Shown here in pieces: positions 35,633 to 41,033 of a stretch of 64,000 nt of DNA (positions are counted from its first letter, which is position 1; each line of letters starts with the position of its first letter). The notes below the pieces were generated by a model that was given only the letters and a program-made list of their open reading frames with translations, ran no database searches and was not told the origin of the DNA. The stretch lies in IMG/VR virus record IMGVR_UViG_3300042907_001080, positions 62,001 to 126,000 of that record; one strand, given 5' to 3'. A program made the translations under genes and the position numbers.

Positions 35633-36496
35633 ATGGACCAAATTCCTAATTACAGTCAGCCAAAAAAGAACCCGCTGGCCAGCTTTTATAGACAGCCAAA
35701 GATCTATGTCAAACTACCAAGCAAGGGCGAGTTCTATCCACCTGGCAGTTTGGATGTCAGTGCCAACGGAGAATATCCTGTTTATGCAATGACTGCCAAA
35801 GATGAACTACTGTTTAAAACTCCGGATGCCTTGTTAAGCGGACAAAGCACTGTGGAATTGATCAAGAGCTGTATTCCAGCGATAACCAATCCCTGGGCTA
35901 TGCCAAACATAGATCTAGACTTTGCTCTGATAGCCATACGCATTGCTACCTACGGAGACAAGATGGAAGTGGGGTGTAACTGTCCTCATTGTGAAGCTGA
36001 AAACAGCTACGACATCGATCTCACTGCTTGGTTTGGTGTGTTCAACAATTTCCAATACGAAAAAGACATACCAATAGATCAACTAACAGTGCATGTGCGT
36101 CCGTATACCTACAAAGAAGTCACAAAAACTGCAATCCAAACCATGGAGCAGCAGAGAATATTCCAGATCATCAATGATGACACCCTCACAGACGAAGTCA
36201 AACTAGAAAGATTTGGCGCTAGTTTTATCAAGCTCACAGAACTCACAGTGGATATCATTGCAGACTGTATCACTGCCATAGATGCACCAGAAGGCACTGT
36301 TACTGATCAAGCTATGATCAAAGAGTTTATTGCAAACTGTGCCAAAGATGTATTTGAAAAAATACAGAACCATGTGATACAGATGAAAGACAACATTCAG
36401 TTTGAAGCACAAAACGTTACCTGTGGAGAATGTAATAAGTCATTTAGCTTGCCTATTACAATGGATCAGGCAAATTTTTTCGCCGTAAAATCTTAA
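35633..36496 (+). CDS. gp26: baseplate hub assembly protein (gp26-like)
   Basis: NPL..F.RQPKIY..LPS.G.FY, MTAKDEL, D.D..LIAIR.ATYG, two CxxC motifs (CPHC, CGEC), C-terminal NFF. Confidence 0.75.
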   Translation: MDQIPNYSQPKKNPLASFYRQPKIYVKLPSKGEFYPPGSLDVSANGEYPVYAMTAKDELLFKTPDALLSGQSTVELIKSCIPAITNPWAMPNIDLDFALIAIRIATYGDKMEVGCNCPHCEAENSYDIDLTAWFGVFNNFQYEKDIPIDQLTVHVRPYTYKEVTKTAIQTMEQQRIFQIINDDTLTDEVKLERFGASFIKLTELTVDIIADCITAIDAPEGTVTDQAMIKEFIANCAKDVFEKIQNHVIQMKDNIQFEAQNVTCGECNKSFSLPITMDQANFFAVKS

Positions 36497-36708: not shown

Positions 36709-37130
36709 AGCGTGTTTCTATAAGACTTTAGAGCAAACAAGTCTTGACTATCAAGAGGTCTGCCTCGCAGCACTTTGTCAACGGTAGCACCTAATTCTTT
36801 ATCACTGATATCTCCACGGTAAGTTCTTAATTTTTGTAGACTTGCTGTGTCCAACGACTTGCCGGACATGGCTTGATCAATCAGGGTCTTAAGTTCTGTA
36901 GTGTCAGCGGGAGCTGCATTGGATTTGGTTTTAGATTTTTCAGTGCCGGATGGTTCAAACCATCTAGACGGAGTTAATAGCTTGTCCATCTTGTCTGCAC
37001 CTTTGTCATACTGTAGTTTAGCGTTGGTGCCATCAAGCCATTTACTAGGACTTAACACTTTGTCCATCTTAGACTTGCCTTTTTCGTAGGCCACTGGTCC
37101 AACTTCAACCACAATGTCACGTATTTTCAT
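36705..37130 (-). CDS. hypothetical protein (MKIRDIVVE; probable internal head protein)
   Basis: N-terminal M-K-I-x-D/E motif; internal duplication YEKGKSKMDKVLSPSKW / YDKGADKMDKLLTPSRW. Confidence 0.7.
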   Translation of the reverse strand: MKIRDIVVEVGPVAYEKGKSKMDKVLSPSKWLDGTNAKLQYDKGADKMDKLLTPSRWFEPSGTEKSKTKSNAAPADTTELKTLIDQAMSGKSLDTASLQKLRTYRGDISDKELGATVDKVLRGRPLDSQDLFALKSYRNTL

Positions 37131-38098
37131 TTTCTAAATACGCTGATCGTGCCTTGTGATAATCCGGTTTCAAACATTTTTTGCTTGTGCATTTCCACTC
37201 GTTGAGCCAAAGCTTCTGACAGTGTATTTCCATGATTAATCTTGCTGGCATTTTGTTGAGATAATTGATTAGCCATATTAGCCATCACTTTGTTGCCGGT
37301 GGAACTAGCAGCAGCTGCCGCTTGACGTTTTTCACGTTTACGTATAGCATTTGGTGTTTGACTTACTTGACCCGCTACTCTGCCGCCTCTTTTCTTGGTT
37401 TGAGGTTGATTGGGATTATCTGCAGCCGCGGTGTTTGTGGCACTAACTGGTGCATTGGCCATGGTGTTAGCTGGTGCTGCTGCGGCTCCCGCATCTGCCG
37501 CTGCTGCCGTTGTTGGTTCAGCAGCTGGTGCTGCTGCGGCTCCCGCTGCTGGGGGAGTTGTCGCTGCCGGTGCTGCTCCTACAGCTGGTTTAGGATCAGG
37601 TGTTGCCATCGATTTCTGCAACAACTGTAAAATTCTCTGCTTGCCTTTCTTATCTAACTTGTCTACGTTGGCTTTTACTTGTGCGTAGACTGTTTGTCCT
37701 GCTTTGGCAGTAGTCTGTTTGTCTACTGCTGCGGTTGTTTTAGCTAACGCAGCGCCAGCTGCTCCTGTTTGTGCCACAGCAGGTGCTGTACCTGTAGGAC
37801 CTTGCGCATTGATATCTTTTGCTGAAGGAGTTCCGCCACTTGGTGCTGTTGGCGCTCCACCTGCATCATACCCAGGCTGTCCTTTATTAGGATCAGGATC
37901 ATCGCCTACAAATGCTTTGCCAGCTTGATATCCTTTCTTCATAGCACGACCAGCACCTGCTACCCCACCTGCTACAGCTCCTACAGTGTTAGCTACACCA
38001 CGGGCAGCATTACCTACAACTGAACCGATCTTATTTAAAATAGGTCCTTCTTCAAGATGTTGGGTTTCTGATTCGGTTAATAGTTCATTAATTCTCAT
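37127..38098 (-). CDS. Ala/Pro-rich hypothetical protein (MRINELLTE; probable internal head protein)
   Basis: LTE/LEE protease-type motifs at the N-terminus; low complexity; late promoter ATAAATA at 38127-38133. Confidence 0.7.
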   Translation of the reverse strand: MRINELLTESETQHLEEGPILNKIGSVVGNAARGVANTVGAVAGGVAGAGRAMKKGYQAGKAFVGDDPDPNKGQPGYDAGGAPTAPSGGTPSAKDINAQGPTGTAPAVAQTGAAGAALAKTTAAVDKQTTAKAGQTVYAQVKANVDKLDKKGKQRILQLLQKSMATPDPKPAVGAAPAATTPPAAGAAAAPAAEPTTAAAADAGAAAAPANTMANAPVSATNTAAADNPNQPQTKKRGGRVAGQVSQTPNAIRKREKRQAAAAASSTGNKVMANMANQLSQQNASKINHGNTLSEALAQRVEMHKQKMFETGLSQGTISVFRK

Positions 38099-38129
38099 AT
38101 CAAGGCATTCCTAAAAGGTATAACTTTAT

Positions 38130-38590
38130 TTATTAAAAACGAGCTTGCGCTCGTTTGCGTTTTCGCTTGTCGCTCAACGCGATTGTCTTCTTTTTAATAA
38201 TTATTGACATTGTAATTGCGAAGCAATTCAAGTATTATGCAGATTGTTCAGTCACACTTTGCCCAGGCCGGGCAAAGATAAGAGCATTATGCGAGTTGCA
38301 CAGTACACTCTAGCGTTACAGCATTACAGAGGCGGTCATCCGGTACCTCGAGCTGCGTCTTTATATGACGGCGGCTTACAAACATACGCTAACATGTTTG
38401 CAAACGTGGGGCTTATTTCCCCTCTTTTTGCCTTGTTTTTCTTTTCAAATAACCAAATCGCAGGTCTTGGTAGCGATCGTCATCCTTTCGGGTAGTGGTT
38501 AAGCACCTTTGCGGCAAGGTTTTCCATCCCTGTGTACACGTAGACCAGGTTTAGAGCGCACGAAATTGAGCCTGCGCTAGCCAAAAAACC
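38130..38590 (-). ncRNA. uncharacterised large structured ncRNA and/or replication-origin element
   Basis: ~490-nt intergenic gap in a dense genome; more than 10 stems, several with G-U pairs only on the minus strand; long-range closing helix 38552-61/38303-12. Confidence 0.55.
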
Positions 38591-38593
38591 GCT

Positions 38594-39028
38594 TTATTTT
38601 GCCTGAGATTGTTCTAGTAGACGCTGTCTAAGTATGTTTGATCCGCCAACTCTGACATTTATAATACCATTATAATAGTCATCAGTTTCTAAAACTCTGC
38701 GTTCAAACTGCTCTCTTGCTTCTAAATATGATAGTTCTGCCTTGGACTTGCAAAGGTAAAGTATTTCTCTTGTGAAATTTTCCGGACCTAATGTTTGGAC
38801 GTCTGCGTTTAACCTATCAGATGAACCATAGTATTCGCGCCAATCGCTTTCTACTACACTTCTTCTTTTGAGTTTTTTGCCTTTGAGTGGGGGTTTGGTA
38901 CGTTTGAATTGTGCTAATTTCTTGCCTATGTACTTCTGTCCGGTGGTTTTATTCGTGATTATATAAACAAAGCCAATATAGCCTTCTGGTATTTCGTCTA
39001 TTATTTGATTTTGAAACGTCCATTGCAC
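38594..39028 (-). CDS. GIY-YIG endonuclease (T4 Endo II/DenA- or Seg-like, catalytic domain only)
   Basis: GFVYIITNKTTGQKYIGKK, SDW..YYGSS, F.REIL, E...QF...VL....YYNG.I. Confidence 0.85.
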   Translation of the reverse strand: MQWTFQNQIIDEIPEGYIGFVYIITNKTTGQKYIGKKLAQFKRTKPPLKGKKLKRRSVVESDWREYYGSSDRLNADVQTLGPENFTREILYLCKSKAELSYLEAREQFERRVLETDDYYNGIINVRVGGSNILRQRLLEQSQAK

Positions 39029-39039
39029 TCTTTAATTAG

Positions 39040-39258
39040 TTAAAGCTTCTTGCCTCTCATGCCTTTTCTGGATTCTCGCTGTGCCTTTCGTTTATCTTGT
39101 ATTTCTACTCTTATGATTGATGCCTGTGTGCGTATTTCTGATAGCCATGATCTTGCTTTGATACCTGCTTCGTTGGATTTTTTGTGATGAAATCGATCCT
39201 GCCATTTAAAGTATTCTTGAAAGGCATGGATCATACGATCGTGTGCGTCCGAACTCAT
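39040..39258 (-). CDS. small basic protein, possibly Hc1/histone-H1-like
   Basis: K.N.AG.KAR..L.E......R.EI and a K/R-rich tail. Confidence 0.5.
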   Translation of the reverse strand: MSSDAHDRMIHAFQEYFKWQDRFHHKKSNEAGIKARSWLSEIRTQASIIRVEIQDKRKAQRESRKGMRGKKL

Positions 39259-41033
39259 GCCATAATCTCTATGTCATTGCTATAACTAGTGAATCCATTT
39301 TCTTTGATCACTTTCAGCACGTGATTAACACGACTGGTCAAATCATCTCTATGTGAAATCAAGAACACATTCTTGTCACGCTCACGAGTCATGCGTTTCA
39401 ACACAGCAATACTGGATTCAACACCACTAGCATCCATGCCCGAATCTACAAGTTCGTCGATAAACAACAAATTAATACTGGTGTATAGGTTTTCCCACAC
39501 ATCACGGAACGCCCACGACAAAGATAAGATCAATCTGTTACGTTCTCCACGGCTTAGATTGTCAAAATCTAGATCTTGTCCTAGCTGTGTGATAACCACA
39601 GTTAAATCATTCTGAAACTCCACAGTGTGAGGCAATCCGATCTTGTCCAAATAATATGTCAAACGTTGATTCAAGAACGCAAGATTCTGATCTATTATTC
39701 GTTTGCGAACAAAACTATCTTTGTTGGTCAATAACTTGTGCAAGAACTCTTGATGATCTTTAACACGCACTAGTTCGTTGAGTCCGTTCCAATCTATTTC
39801 CTGCACAGCTGTTTCTTTGAGTTCAACAATCTGATCGTCATAGGGATTTTCTTCTGCAGTCTTGATAGTAATGTCACGCTCTAGGCTGTCTAGGGTATTT
39901 TTATGGTTCAATGCTGCTTCTAAACTATCGTAGGTCACTGAAGGACACGCACCTAGTTCGCCCAGCAGCGATATTGCTTCAGTGATCACACTGAGCTCTT
40001 CGAGATGTTCGTTGATAGCGCCACGGCTTTCTTCAATCTGTGCAGACTTAGCAGACATAATTTCATTATGTTTGGCGTCGTGTAGCTCTTGGCCGCAGGT
40101 ATGACATTTGTGTTCTGTTAGACTGACTAATTCTCGTTCTAGTTTGTCTAGAATACGCTGTTCTTTTTCCAAAGCTGAAGTTTGTTTAGCACTCAGTGAT
40201 GCTAGACTCTCGTGTTCCTTTTTATTTGTATTCCAATCTGCTAATGCTCGCTGATTGACGATTTCTTGATCAATGTCAATGTCGCTGAGCCGATCAATGC
40301 TTTTGAGTAAATTAGTCAGAGCAGTTTCTTTTTGTTCTTCCCACATGCGTTGTTTGCGTATCAACGACTCTATGCTTTGTTGTATTCTTTCGTTGCTGGC
40401 TTTGACAGTTTCTATTCTTGTGTTTTCTGTTGCAATGCTGTCTTTGCTGATTCTAATTGCATCTTTAAGTGCTTCTGCCTTTTCTGACAGTATGGTAATT
40501 CCCAACAACTGTTCAATAATAGCACGTTGATCTGCAGCTTTCATGCTCAAAAAAGGTTCTGTGTAGGTGTTTAATGCAATGAGATGTTTGAACATCTCAT
40601 GTTTCATGCCAAACACTTCTTCAATGGCCTTTTGTGTTTCTCTGCTGTCGCCTTGACTTTCGTCAAGATCGCTGAGCTCTTGTTCTTGATCATTTATACT
40701 GAATCTCAGTAAATTAGGCTTGCGACCTCGCTCGATATGATACTTGACTCCATCTTTTTCAAAAGTCACTGTACACAGCATTCCTTTGCTGTTGATCTTG
40801 TTGATAAGATTATCACGTTTGATATTAGTCAGCGCCTGTCCGTAGATGGCATAACTTAATCCGTTGATAATAGTAGTCTTGCCTGTGCCATTTCTAGCAC
40901 CGCTGTCGTCACCGCCTAGGTCCATATTTTCACCTAGCACCAAGGTAAGCTGACCTTTGTCAAAATCAATGGCCTGGGTCTGATTACCCACGCTCATGAA
41001 GTTGCGCACTGTGAGATTGTTGATTTTAATCAT
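39255..41033 (-). CDS. gp46: recombination endonuclease ATPase subunit (gp46; SbcC/Rad50-like)
   Basis: NFMSVGN, Walker A NGTGKT, CHTC zinc hook, LSRGE signature, LFIDE Walker B, ISH. Confidence 0.95.
   Translation of the reverse strand: MIKINNLTVRNFMSVGNQTQAIDFDKGQLTLVLGENMDLGGDDSGARNGTGKTTIINGLSYAIYGQALTNIKRDNLINKINSKGMLCTVTFEKDGVKYHIERGRKPNLLRFSINDQEQELSDLDESQGDSRETQKAIEEVFGMKHEMFKHLIALNTYTEPFLSMKAADQRAIIEQLLGITILSEKAEALKDAIRISKDSIATENTRIETVKASNERIQQSIESLIRKQRMWEEQKETALTNLLKSIDRLSDIDIDQEIVNQRALADWNTNKKEHESLASLSAKQTSALEKEQRILDKLERELVSLTEHKCHTCGQELHDAKHNEIMSAKSAQIEESRGAINEHLEELSVITEAISLLGELGACPSVTYDSLEAALNHKNTLDSLERDITIKTAEENPYDDQIVELKETAVQEIDWNGLNELVRVKDHQEFLHKLLTNKDSFVRKRIIDQNLAFLNQRLTYYLDKIGLPHTVEFQNDLTVVITQLGQDLDFDNLSRGERNRLILSLSWAFRDVWENLYTSINLLFIDELVDSGMDASGVESSIAVLKRMTRERDKNVFLISHRDDLTSRVNHVLKVIKENGFTSYSNDIEIMA

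What the first reader, a model, noticed from the sequence alone, without database searches (positions are those of the whole stretch)
38303..38590. Large unannotated structured RNA immediately downstream of a minimal GIY-YIG nuclease
Seen on the minus strand, starting right after the nuclease stop. A 10-bp long-range helix GTGCGCTCTA (38561-52) / TAGAGTGTAC (38312-03) with two G-U pairs closes a ~260-nt domain. Inside it are CCTG/CAGG; ACCTT/AAGGT; TAACCA/TGGTTA enclosing CC-GAAA-GG and ATCGC/GCGAT; GGGG/CCCC; a 12-bp TTGCAAACATGT/GTATGTTTGTAA stem with three G-U pairs; CGTC/GACG; and CAGC..GAGG..CGG-ATGA-CCG-CCTC..GCTG. An alternative hairpin AGCGCA/TGCGCT competes with the closing helix. The wobbles work only on the minus strand, which points to an RNA co-transcribed with gp47-gp46-basic protein-nuclease. 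I do not recognise RNase P, tmRNA, tRNA or group I/II core motifs. Inference: a new ncRNA class. It could be a partner RNA for the 144-aa nuclease, which lacks an obvious separate DNA-binding domain, or an R-loop primer RNA for replication.
Basis: partly seen in the sequence, partly recalled or inferred. Interest (0 to 1): 0.85.

Follow-up and report, generated by a model that had tools for sequence, protein, structure and literature searches.

The report
Large phage RNA, partly known family
The stretch is a real, about 458-base folded non-coding RNA of a T4-like freshwater phage; its first third is the already catalogued Polynucleobacter-1 RNA (Rfam RF01718), the rest is an undescribed extension, its function is unknown, and it is probably not a dedicated partner of the neighbouring nuclease.

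Summary
The RNA is real, but it is not a new class. Window 38447-38582(-) matches Rfam RF01718 (Polynucleobacter-1 RNA) at 101 bits against a cut-off of 37.

It runs from 38592, one base after the GIY-YIG stop codon, to an intrinsic terminator ending near 38135. A T4-type late promoter motif for the next gene follows at 38133-38127.

They reject his 10-bp closing helix and his CGUC/GACG and CGG/CCG stems.

In phages the RNA nearly always abuts a small nuclease gene: GIY-YIG in 88 of 95 loci and a PD-(D/E)XK nuclease in 3 more. However, full-length copies also sit in Polynucleobacter chromosomal islands with no such nuclease, and GIY-YIG homologues elsewhere (Melnitz, P-SSM2, nrdB-linked copies) lack the RNA.

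My best reading is an autonomous, trans-acting structured RNA read through from the upstream early gene. The nuclease genes occupy a variable slot next to it. Function is unknown.

The parts
38135..38592 (-). Whole non-coding RNA, about 458 nt: 5' leader, RF01718 domain, A-rich linker, mid domain, 3' domain, terminator
   Evidence: Conserved end to end in more than 150 viral contigs. MFE z -2.56 for the full length. Metatranscriptome contigs cover it and start at 38134.
38594..39028 (-). 144-aa stand-alone GIY-YIG nuclease gene (Pfam SegE_GIY-YIG, PHROG 447, often mislabelled 'NAD synthetase'); stop codon TAA at 38594-38596
   Evidence: Pfam E 9e-37. phrog_447 E 2e-40. GFVY, YIG, E and N positions are at least 97% conserved in 92 homologues.
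38588..38592 (-). PK0 5' strand GCGGU. It pairs with GCCGC at 38511-38515, in the loop of hairpin P3.
   Evidence: 287 of 290 cells paired. The first pair shows GC34/AU19/UA3. Slid controls reach at most 38%. Bacterial copies use CUACUG/CAGUAG instead, 90 of 90 paired.
38447..38582 (-). Polynucleobacter-1 RNA domain (Rfam RF01718), helices P1-P5, with the conserved stretch CACAGGGAUGGAAA at 38520-38533
   Evidence: 101.1 bits against gathering score 37, model positions 1-141 of 141. Helix covariation.
38298..38436 (-). Mid domain, not in Rfam: hairpin GGGG/CCCC, long hairpin 38376-38403, GCCGCC, and a three-helix core around the invariant GGUACCGG...ACCGCC
   Evidence: Own covariance model R1 scores 147 bits here and 48-155 bits in the 58 matching homologue loci. 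97.1% of cells paired against 78.7% in shuffles (0 of 500), 21 of 29 pairs compensatory. Weak resemblance to cow-rumen-2 RNA only.
38386..38391 (-). Hairpin-loop strand UAGCGU of pseudoknot PK1. Its partner is ACGCUA at 38311-38316.
   Evidence: 338 of 348 cells paired, 3 of 6 pairs compensatory, slid controls at most 74% (first seen). The bacterial equivalent is GCCACU/AGUGGU.
38335..38369 (-). Long-range helix GUCAU(38369-65)/AUGAC(38339-35), which encloses CAGC(38355-52) and GAGG(38349-46). Their partners GCUG(38322-19) and CCUC(38332-29) lie beyond it.
   Evidence: 272 of 287 cells paired, 3 of 5 compensatory. CAGC/GCUG 3 of 4 compensatory. GAGG/CCUC 219 of 232 paired.
38135..38303 (-). 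3' domain: two internally duplicated modules (..GUGU(G)AC..CU(C)GCAUAAU..), hairpin CUUUGCCC/GGGCAAAG at 38257-38277, UUCG-loop hairpin at 38215-38227, and an A/U-rich spacer of variable length at 38181-38214
   Evidence: Alignments. This is the most widely shared part. It is also present behind GIY-YIG genes whose RNA has a different 5' domain.
38157..38180 (-). Helix GCGU/ACGC enclosing the near-invariant UGAGCGACAAGCGAAA (UGA/GAAA internal loop plus mini-hairpin)
   Evidence: 4 of 4 outer pairs compensatory. The same element occurs with GUGA/UCAC in bacterial copies.
38135..38156 (-). Intrinsic terminator: stem AAACGAGC/GCUCGUUU with a run of U
   Evidence: 5 of 8 stem pairs compensatory. 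Metatranscriptome contigs begin at 38134 in two runs. The simple scan did not flag it; my guess is that the maximal stem takes up part of the U run.
38127..38133 (-). AUAAAUA, a T4-type late-promoter-like motif, 28 nt before the ATG at 38098
   Evidence: Near-invariant after the terminator in homologues. Genome-wide, 29 of 47 copies lie 5-60 nt upstream of ATG ORFs, against 3-24% for composition-matched heptamers.
37127..38098 (-). Downstream 323-aa Ala/Gly/Pro-rich protein gene, probably late. Not part of the RNA.
   Evidence: ORF. No Pfam or PHROG hit. Its position relative to the RNA varies from +437 to about +2800 in relatives.
39040..39258 (-). 72-aa very basic protein gene between gp46 and the nuclease, present only in closer relatives
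   Evidence: No family hit.

Best explanation
Window 38592 to about 38135 (minus strand) is one gene for a large non-coding RNA of about 458 nt with several domains and pseudoknots.

Domain layout:
- Its 5' domain is a textbook member of the Rfam family Polynucleobacter-1 RNA (RF01718).
- The mid and 3' domains are an undescribed part of the same RNA. They are shared by many aquatic T4-like phages and by chromosomal islands of Polynucleobacter.

Shown:
- Family membership.
- Extent of the RNA.
- Helices supported by covariation, and three long-range pairings.
- A terminator, followed by a late-promoter-like motif.

Inferred:
- In the phage the RNA has no promoter of its own. It is made by read-through from the upstream early/middle unit (gp47-gp46-basic protein-nuclease), because its first helix strand abuts or overlaps the upstream stop codon.
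- It ends at its own intrinsic terminator and is not a leader of the next, late gene.
- It works in trans as a folded RNA: a protein scaffold, a decoy, or possibly a ribozyme.
- Its target is supplied by the host cell or by phage infection in general, because no neighbouring protein-coding gene is common to the phage and island copies; the RNA and, as far as binning suggests, a Polynucleobacter host are.
- The small nuclease genes next to it (GIY-YIG in most loci, PD-(D/E)XK in some) occupy a variable slot between gp46 and this conserved RNA gene. This is what free-standing homing-type or early host-DNA nucleases do. They do not form an obligatory complex with the RNA.

The biochemical function is unknown.
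For: Membership: 101 bits against a cut-off of 37.

Extent: end-to-end conservation in 57 non-redundant homologues.

Structure:
- Mid domain: 97% of cells paired against 79% shuffled, 21 of 29 pairs compensatory.
- The three long-range pairings are 95-99% paired, with slid controls at most 74%.
- Terminator and the GCGU/ACGC helix are compensatory.

Not a leader of the next gene: the terminator is followed by ATAAATA, a motif enriched upstream of ORFs genome-wide.

Co-transcription:
- The upstream stop codon lies -15 to +10 nt from the first paired base in 57 of 57 homologues.
- In L348 the RNA again starts at the stop codon of the PD-(D/E)XK gene that sits there in place of GIY-YIG; behind other upstream genes (L373, L405) the recognisable part starts further on.
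- Contigs from four freshwater metatranscriptomes cover the RNA plus the nuclease gene, and in two of them (X4, X5) a single contig bridges the two. The next gene has about zero depth.

Autonomy:
- 17 of 141 Polynucleobacter genomes carry the RNA.
- In 15 chromosomal loci it is full length, has its own upstream motif and its own terminator.
- In six copies from five complete chromosomes (the upstream flank readable in five), a DUF6641 gene runs divergently upstream, and recombinase genes lie downstream. There is no GIY-YIG there or anywhere in those five genomes.

Nuclease without the RNA: Melnitz, P-SSM2, and copies linked to nrdB.

Variable slot: of 95 RNA loci, 71 have GIY-YIG abutting, 17 have it further upstream, and 7 have none. 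Three of those 7 have PF24608 PD-(D/E)XK in its place.
Against: - No direct evidence of a discrete stable transcript or of its ends. The metatranscriptome data are unstranded contigs. One contig runs on past the terminator. Depth may partly reflect sequence conservation among strains.
- The tie between small nuclease genes and the RNA in phages is very strong (91 of 95 loci). It persists across RNA variants with different 5' domains and in rearranged orientations. Something more than a shared slot could explain this.
- The island copies could still meet the phage nuclease in trans during infection.
- No host target has been identified.
Confidence: 0.5

Rival explanations
1. Nuclease-associated RNA: the RNA is a cofactor, scaffold, targeting RNA or inhibitor (antitoxin-like) of the small nuclease encoded just upstream.
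For: - 88 of 95 phage loci found through the RNA have GIY-YIG upstream on the same strand. Three more have an unrelated PD-(D/E)XK nuclease in the same place.
- The RNA starts at the nuclease stop codon.
- The association holds for RNA variants that lack the RF01718 domain and for rearranged loci.
- The nuclease has no separate DNA-binding domain.
Against: - Full-length RNA occurs in Polynucleobacter chromosomes that have no such nuclease.
- GIY-YIG homologues of 46-72% identity occur without the RNA in Melnitz, P-SSM2 and nrdB-linked loci.
- Four phage loci have no recognised nuclease gene upstream: a phosphorylase-family gene, an amidoligase gene, and two without a family hit.
- Two unrelated nuclease folds would have to use the same RNA.
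- There is no short hypervariable guide-like segment. The only variable stretch is an A/U-rich spacer of variable length. There is no complementarity of 14 nt or more elsewhere in the phage genome.
- T4 EndoII shows that a GIY-YIG protein annotated at 144 aa can stand alone (that it works without a partner RNA is established knowledge).
Confidence: 0.13
2. Homing relationship: the nucleases are free-standing homing-type endonucleases that insert beside, and perhaps cut within, the highly conserved RNA gene or gp46. The RNA gene would be the landmark or target, not a partner. This is compatible with the best explanation of the RNA itself.
For: - The same nuclease family sits at two different conserved loci, downstream of gp46 and downstream of nrdB.
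- Presence/absence and non-homologous replacement at one slot.
- Variable orientation.
- Variable flanks around a constant RNA.
Against: - GIY-YIG is nearly fixed (88 of 95 loci) and diverges in step with the RNA (43-100% identity). That looks more like a resident gene than a sporadic selfish one.
- There is no DNA-binding domain.
- The family is close to universal in cyanomyophage records.
- No cleavage data exist.
Confidence: 0.2
3. Cis-acting 3' UTR element that controls stability, termination or translation of the upstream nuclease mRNA.
For: - The first helix strand overlaps or abuts the stop codon, so a terminating ribosome and PK0 would exclude each other.
- The element always abuts an upstream ORF in phages.
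Against: - Bacterial copies have no upstream ORF on the same strand and carry their own promoter-like motif.
- About 460 nt with three long-range pairings and many invariant unpaired bases is far more than an mRNA end-protection element needs.
- The upstream gene is interchangeable.
Confidence: 0.07
4. Replication-origin transcript or R-loop primer RNA.
For: - It lies at the end of a replication/recombination gene block.
- It is shared by a phage and by an island that encodes a clamp-loader-like ATPase.
Against: - Conservation is of RNA pairing (compensatory changes, G-U pairs), not of DNA sequence features.
- It ends at a terminator.
- No origin-like repeats were noticed when reading the sequence and alignments, but no repeat search was run.
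- Nothing tests this directly.
Confidence: 0.05
5. 5' leader or riboswitch of the downstream gene. The family was tentatively scored 'cis-reg: y' in 2010.
For: Table in PMC2864571.
Against: - A covarying terminator and then a late-promoter motif separate it from the next ATG.
- The downstream gene differs between relatives and sits 0.4-2.8 kb away.
- The 2010 supplement itself says the RNAs lie downstream of a gene family.
Confidence: 0.03

Closest known systems
Polynucleobacter-1 RNA motif (Rfam RF01718; Weinberg et al. 2010, PMC2864571)
   Same: The 5' domain 38447-38582 is a full-length, high-scoring member. It shares the freshwater/Polynucleobacter range and the position downstream of the GOS11034/PSSM2_218 gene family, which I show to be this GIY-YIG family.
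   Different: - The Rfam model covers only about 30% of the RNA.
- A 5' pseudoknot strand, the mid domain and the 3' domain are not described.
- The family was not found in purified phages in 2010. Here it sits in a 282-kb T4-like phage record and in well over a hundred viral contigs.
- Some relatives keep the mid and 3' domains but lack the RF01718 domain.
cow-rumen-2 RNA (Rfam RF02947)
   Same: The same order of motifs as the mid domain: a hairpin with a UUAGC loop, then GCCGCC, then GGAUGACC inside a closing helix, then GUAA-GC. Sub-threshold hits fall at the same place in 15 of 32 homologues.
   Different: Scores are 9-23 bits against a cut-off of 66, so this is not a member. Its function is also unknown, so the resemblance gives no functional lead.
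Large structured RNAs of phages and mobile elements with unknown function (GOLLD, ROOL) - from my own knowledge
   Same: Several hundred nucleotides, many conserved helices and pseudoknots, carried by phages and by chromosomal mobile elements, no known function.
   Different: No Rfam match to any of them. Smaller than they are. Tightly placed behind a nuclease gene.
Nuclease-linked RNAs: HEARO/omega RNA of IscB and TnpB - from my own knowledge and the titles found
   Same: A conserved structured RNA directly beside a small nuclease gene in a mobile genetic context. HEARO came from the same 2010 survey.
   Different: - The nuclease is GIY-YIG or PD-(D/E)XK, not RuvC/HNH.
- There is no guide-like variable end.
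- The RNA and the nuclease each occur without the other.
- The literature search found no RNA-guided GIY-YIG enzyme.
T4 endonuclease II (denA)
   Same: An annotated stand-alone 144-aa GIY-YIG nuclease of a T4-type phage. In T4 it lies directly after nrdB, as the Melnitz-type homologues of the window's nuclease do.
   Different: No detectable pairwise sequence similarity, and a different Pfam model. Orthology is not shown.

Membership tests
Rfam RF01718 Polynucleobacter-1 RNA | Covariance-model score at or above the curated gathering score (37 bits), over the whole model | tested here: met
   101.1 bits, model positions 1-141 of 141, E 1e-20.
Rfam RF01718 Polynucleobacter-1 RNA | The model's helices are kept by compensatory changes in homologues | tested here: met
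   P1 5 of 6, P4 4 of 6 and P5 4 of 5 pairs compensatory; P2 92% paired.
Rfam RF01718 Polynucleobacter-1 RNA | Context and range given by its authors: downstream of GOS11034/PSSM2_218-like genes; freshwater samples and Polynucleobacter | tested here: met
   PSSM2_218 is 46% identical to the window's nuclease, E 6e-25. Freshwater metatranscriptomes hold the sequence. 17 of 141 Polynucleobacter genomes carry the family.
Rfam RF02947 cow-rumen-2 RNA | Score at or above the gathering score of 66 bits | tested here: not met
   22.3 bits in the window. 9-23 bits in 15 of 32 homologues.
Guide-RNA nuclease systems (omega RNA / CRISPR-like) | RNA and nuclease are always found together | tested here: not met
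   RNA without the nuclease. Nuclease without the RNA.
Guide-RNA nuclease systems (omega RNA / CRISPR-like) | A short hypervariable guide segment beside a conserved scaffold, with matching targets | tested here: inconclusive
   The only unstructured variable stretch (38181-38214) is A/U-rich and variable in length. There are no matches of 14 nt or more elsewhere in the phage genome. Host targets were not searched.
Group I / group II introns and known self-cleaving ribozymes | Match to the Rfam models of these classes | tested here: not met
   No such hit at E up to 1 in 37900-39300. There are no interrupted flanking exons, and the flanks vary.
Rho-independent terminator | Stable hairpin followed by a run of U at the 3' end of the conserved region | tested here: met
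   Stem at 38156-38137 with U at 38139-38135. 5 of 8 pairs compensatory. The simple scan did not list it. Function is not shown.
T4-type late promoter | (T)ATAAATA-like motif a short distance upstream of late genes, enriched in that position | tested here: met
   Motif at 38133-38127, 28 nt before the ATG. 62% of genome copies lie 5-60 nt upstream of ORFs, against 3-24% for controls. Activity is not testable here.
Free-standing homing endonuclease (Seg/Mob type) | Sporadic presence at intergenic sites between conserved genes, and the same family at different loci | tested here: inconclusive
   Two loci (gp46 side, nrdB side), replacement by PD-(D/E)XK, and inversions. But it is present in 88 of 95 loci.
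Free-standing homing endonuclease (Seg/Mob type) | Catalytic domain plus a separate DNA-binding domain, and cleavage of alleles that lack the nuclease gene | tested here: not met
   The 123-position catalytic-domain model spans residues 3-123 of the 144-aa protein, leaving only about 20 further residues. Cleavage is not testable with these tools.
Cis-regulatory leader / riboswitch | Lies in the 5' UTR of the regulated gene with no independent promoter between them | tested here: not met
   A terminator and a late-promoter motif intervene. The downstream gene is variable.

The most novel reading that the evidence does not exclude
The RNA is the common element of a nuclease-RNA system and of a phage-island conflict.

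In this reading, aquatic T4-like phages make a large RNA that works with interchangeable small nucleases (GIY-YIG or PD-(D/E)XK). Polynucleobacter islands carry their own copy behind a phage-late-type promoter motif. On infection the island copy would fire and mimic, titrate or redirect the phage's RNA-nuclease machinery.

This would be a new kind of RNA-dependent nuclease system and an RNA-mimicry defence or satellite strategy.
Probability: 0.1. Interest if true: 0.9.

Novelty: new member of a known kind. Interest (0 to 1): 0.55.

Why it matters
- Large, intricately folded RNAs of unknown function are rare and have repeatedly led to new biochemistry. HEARO, from the same 2010 survey, became the omega RNA of IscB (my own knowledge).
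- A catalogued 141-nt 'motif' turns out to be the 5' third of a modular, pseudoknotted RNA of about 460 nt.
- That RNA is widespread in aquatic T4-like phages and is almost always placed behind a small nuclease gene.
- It is also shared with chromosomal islands of the likely host.
- This gives a defined construct, defined boundaries and two natural contexts for experiments. It also suggests the Rfam model should be extended.
A real, still unexplained RNA remains.

Tried and rejected
- blastn (sensitive mode) of the 501-nt region against 50,697 phage records found no match.
- My phage mid-domain covariance model R1 did not detect the bacterial copies, even with filters off. Their homology over the mid and 3' parts rests on three things: nhmmer hits, including separate 3' hits; their own alignment, which shows the same order of elements; and the equivalent pseudoknots.
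- DUF6641 against the nuclease: no similarity.
- Island proteins against the phage genome and the viral loci: only a weak match between clamp-loader-like proteins.
- PADLOC found no defence system in the island or for the nuclease beyond 'homing endonuclease'.
- No tRNA genes were found in the five island stretches searched (14-20 kb each).
- T4 DenA against the window's nuclease: no BLASTP similarity.
- The PDB sequence search with the nuclease found nothing.
- No second copy of the RNA and no complementary target in the phage genome.
- Literature: no RNA-guided GIY-YIG enzyme, and nothing further on Polynucleobacter-1 or cow-rumen-2.
- One search used a mistyped pattern (four N instead of three). 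Its 15 loci are irrelevant.
- I considered CsrA-type GGA sites (ACAGGGAUG, ACAGGAC), but they are too few and not all conserved in the bacterial copies. I did not pursue this.
- I did not predict the nuclease structure, because the Pfam match was sufficient.
Full report
**What is at the coordinates.** The minus strand between the stop codon of a 144-aa ORF (38594-39028) and the next ATG (38098) is a 495-nt gap with no convincing ORF. The ORF is a stand-alone GIY-YIG nuclease: Pfam SegE_GIY-YIG at E 9e-37 and PHROG 447, whose label 'NAD synthetase' looks like a misnomer given the GIY-YIG match. The window is part of a 281,658-bp IMG/VR virus record. It has T4-type gp46/gp47 and baseplate genes and 28 tRNA genes.

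**Known family.** An Rfam scan gives one hit above threshold in the whole window: RF01718, Polynucleobacter-1 RNA, at 38447-38582(-). It scores 101.1 bits against a gathering score of 37 and covers the full model. The family was published in 2010. The supplement of that paper says most members lie downstream of genes of family GOS11034, 'with possible homology to PSSM2_218' of cyanophage P-SSM2, and that none had been found in a sequenced purified phage (PMC2864571). PSSM2_218 is annotated 'NAD synthetase' and has 145 aa. It is 46% identical to the window's nuclease (E 6e-25). The RNA-nuclease adjacency had therefore been seen before, although the gene had not been recognised as GIY-YIG.

**The RNA is three times larger than the Rfam model.**
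- A 14-mer from the conserved core fetched viral contigs, and the nuclease protein fetched more.
- The whole intergenic region aligns from the stop codon to about 38135, at 52-100% identity.
- With nhmmer I collected 95 full-length copies and reduced them to 57 with less than 93% identity to each other. Alignment A1 is the window plus these 57.
- Downstream of the Rfam domain lie an A-rich linker, a mid domain (38436-38298) and a 3' domain (38303-38135).
- The RNA ends in a covarying hairpin with a run of U, then a near-invariant ATAAATA.
- That heptamer behaves as a promoter element in this genome. It is under-represented, and 29 of its 47 copies lie 5-60 nt upstream of ATG ORFs, against 3-24% for composition-matched controls.
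- The RNA is thus bounded by a terminator and is separated from the next gene by that gene's own T4-type late promoter.

**Structure.**
- They also reveal three long-range pairings he did not see:
  - PK0: GCGGU (38592-88) with GCCGC (38515-11). 287 of 290 cells are paired, and the first pair shows GC34/AU19/UA3.
  - PK1: the loop UAGCGU (38391-86) of the long hairpin with ACGCUA (38316-11). 338 of 348 cells are paired, and 3 of 6 pairs are compensatory.
  - GUCAU (38369-65) with AUGAC (38339-35). 272 of 287 cells are paired, and 3 of 5 pairs are compensatory.
  - With the 3' partner slid by one or two columns, pairing is at most 74%.
- I built a covariance model of the mid domain (R1) and used it to align 59 sequences. 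97.1% of cells pair against 78.7% in shuffles (0 of 500). 21 of 29 pairs have double-sided changes. The covariation score is 0.554 against 0.04-0.09 for slid controls. This alignment was fitted to the model, which inflates such numbers somewhat.
It is 65% paired, and half of its positions are unpaired or absent in most homologues. One strand belongs to P1 (5 of 6 pairs compensatory) and the other overlaps PK1.
- Folding energy alone would not have revealed the RNA: z is -0.66 for his 288 nt and -2.56 for the full 464 nt.
- The mid domain resembles cow-rumen-2 RNA in the order of its motifs but never reaches that family's threshold.

**Transcription.**
- In 57 of 57 homologues with an upstream ORF, the stop codon ends between 15 nt inside and 10 nt before the first base of PK0. 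That leaves no room for a dedicated promoter.
- There is no ATAAATA motif on this strand between 38133 and the genes upstream.
- Four freshwater metatranscriptomes contain contigs over 38134-39240. Single contigs bridge the ORF and the RNA (38326-39028 and 38418-38815). The next gene has almost no depth, and contigs begin at 38134 in two runs.
- These contigs are unstranded, and one runs on past the terminator. This is support, not proof.

**Is it the nuclease's partner? In phages the association is strong.**
- In the first sample chosen through the RNA, every locus with enough upstream DNA had GIY-YIG on the same strand upstream: directly upstream in all but L082, where two genes are inserted.
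- In a second, independent sample chosen through a mid-domain pattern, 95 loci had at least 1 kb upstream. GIY-YIG abuts the RNA in 71. It lies behind a divergent 5' region of about 200 nt in 9, and behind 0.8-1.2 kb of inserted DNA in 8. It is absent in 7.
- In three of those seven a PD-(D/E)XK nuclease (PF24608) occupies its place, and in L348 the RNA again starts right at its stop codon. Two others have a phosphorylase-family gene and an amidoligase gene; in the remaining two the upstream ORFs had no family hit.
- A second clade of the nuclease, 69-91% identical to the L122 protein, carries a non-coding element of 380-660 nt in at least 41 of 80 loci. This element ends in the same UGAGCG..GCGAAA helix and terminator but has other 5' domains and no RF01718 domain.
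- The mid and 3' domains, not the Rfam motif, are therefore the constant part in phages.

**Evidence against an obligatory pair.**
- RF01718 occurs in 17 of 141 Polynucleobacter genomes, often on complete chromosomes.
- Those copies are full length, from a PK0 equivalent (CUACUG/CAGUAG, 90 of 90 cells paired) to the same 3' helix and terminator.
- They have no GIY-YIG upstream, and none anywhere in the five genomes tested.
- Their conserved neighbours are a divergently oriented DUF6641 gene, a 188-aa tyrosine recombinase, two unknown genes, a clamp-loader-like ATPase and a 424-aa integrase. This looks like an integrative island.
- No island protein other than the clamp-loader-like ATPase (about 27% identical to a phage protein) has a homologue in the phage genome; apart from one unrelated match, none has one in the viral loci.
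- Conversely, phage Melnitz has a 64%-identical nuclease after nrdB, only 148 nt before the next ORF, and no RF01718 anywhere in its genome.
- P-SSM2's homologue abuts the next ORF.
- Six nrdB-linked copies in the second clade show no sign of the RNA.
- T4's own denA is annotated as a 144-aa GIY-YIG protein after nrdB, although it has no detectable sequence similarity to the window's protein. A short GIY-YIG protein does not by itself call for an RNA partner.

**Best reading.** This is an autonomous ncRNA gene at the 3' end of the gp47-gp46 early unit. It is expressed by read-through and ended by its own terminator. It acts in trans as a folded RNA on a target that both a lytic phage and a chromosomal island meet in the same host. 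The slot between gp46 and the RNA is variable and is usually filled by a small nuclease gene, either a homing-type insertion or an early host-DNA nuclease. I put about 0.5 on this package, about 0.13 on a true nuclease-RNA complex, and less on cis-regulation, an origin transcript or a leader. The biochemical role is unknown.

**Verdict.** It is a new, phage-borne member of a known family, and the analysis extends what that family is.

Noticed in passing
L226:6138-12904 (Polynucleobacter chromosome G040:C1, about 2.130 Mb); also L227-L230: The RNA sits in a conserved chromosomal module: DUF6641 gene (opposite strand), the RNA, variable small ORFs, a 188-aa tyrosine recombinase, two unknown genes, a clamp-loader-like AAA+ ATPase, and a 424-aa integrase. 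It looks like an integrative island or a phage satellite. Two of the genomes searched carry two copies on the main chromosome.
   Followed up: partly
L208-L225, about 30-90 nt upstream of the bacterial RNA copies (alignment): A conserved CUAAAUAA motif (UAUAAAUAA in two copies) precedes the island RNAs. It resembles the phage's ATAAATA late-promoter motif more than a sigma-70 -10/-35 pair. The island RNA might therefore be switched on by phage infection.
   Followed up: no
L348:3963-4484, L380:335-853(-), L339:1198-1719(-): In phage loci that lack GIY-YIG, a 172-173-aa PD-(D/E)XK endonuclease (Pfam PF24608) takes its place between gp46 and the RNA. This is a non-homologous swap of one small nuclease for another.
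   Followed up: partly
L122:4427-5000; L142:3403-4190; L186; many of L235-L314: RNA variants share the 3' domain and the terminal UGAGCG..GCGAAA helix but have unrelated 5' regions, for example GGUUAGCGGGCCAGUUU...ACCGCUG. The family is modular and much wider than RF01718. In L123 the element lies upstream of the nuclease gene on the opposite strand.
   Followed up: partly
window 38594-39028 and 795 phage records: This GIY-YIG family (PHROG 447) is annotated 'NAD synthetase' in many cyanophage and rhizobiophage records, including P-SSM2 PSSM2_218. This looks like a propagated mis-annotation.
   Followed up: partly
window 38231-38309: The 3' domain contains an internal duplication. AGUGUAC-UGUGCAACUCGCAUAAUGCU and (A)GUGUGAC-UGAACAAUCUGCAUAAUACU each follow a helix. 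Bacterial copies have GCGAAA where the phage has GCAUAAU.
   Followed up: no
window 35594(+), 42970(+), 602(-), 38133(-): ATAAATA motifs lie 6-32 nt upstream of ORF starts, for example the T4_baseplate-family gene at 35633. They are probably late promoters of this phage.
   Followed up: partly
genome C1:265947-272250, outside the window: A cluster of 27 tRNA genes on one strand, plus one tRNA-Glu at 160.5 kb. No tmRNA was found.
   Followed up: no
window 39040-39258(-): A 72-aa strongly basic protein lies between gp46 and the nuclease. It is present in the closer relatives and in many second-clade loci and has no family match. It could bind nucleic acid.
   Followed up: no
L121, L124, L212 (contigs binned into Polynucleobacter MAGs): Phage-like contigs with gp46 (seen in L121 and L212), the nuclease and the RNA are binned with Polynucleobacter genomes. 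Together with the chromosomal RNA copies, this suggests Polynucleobacter as the host of this phage group.
   Followed up: partly
L082:4678-6488(-): In one relative a radical-SAM/B12-binding protein gene and a 151-aa unknown gene are inserted between the nuclease gene and the RNA.
   Followed up: partly
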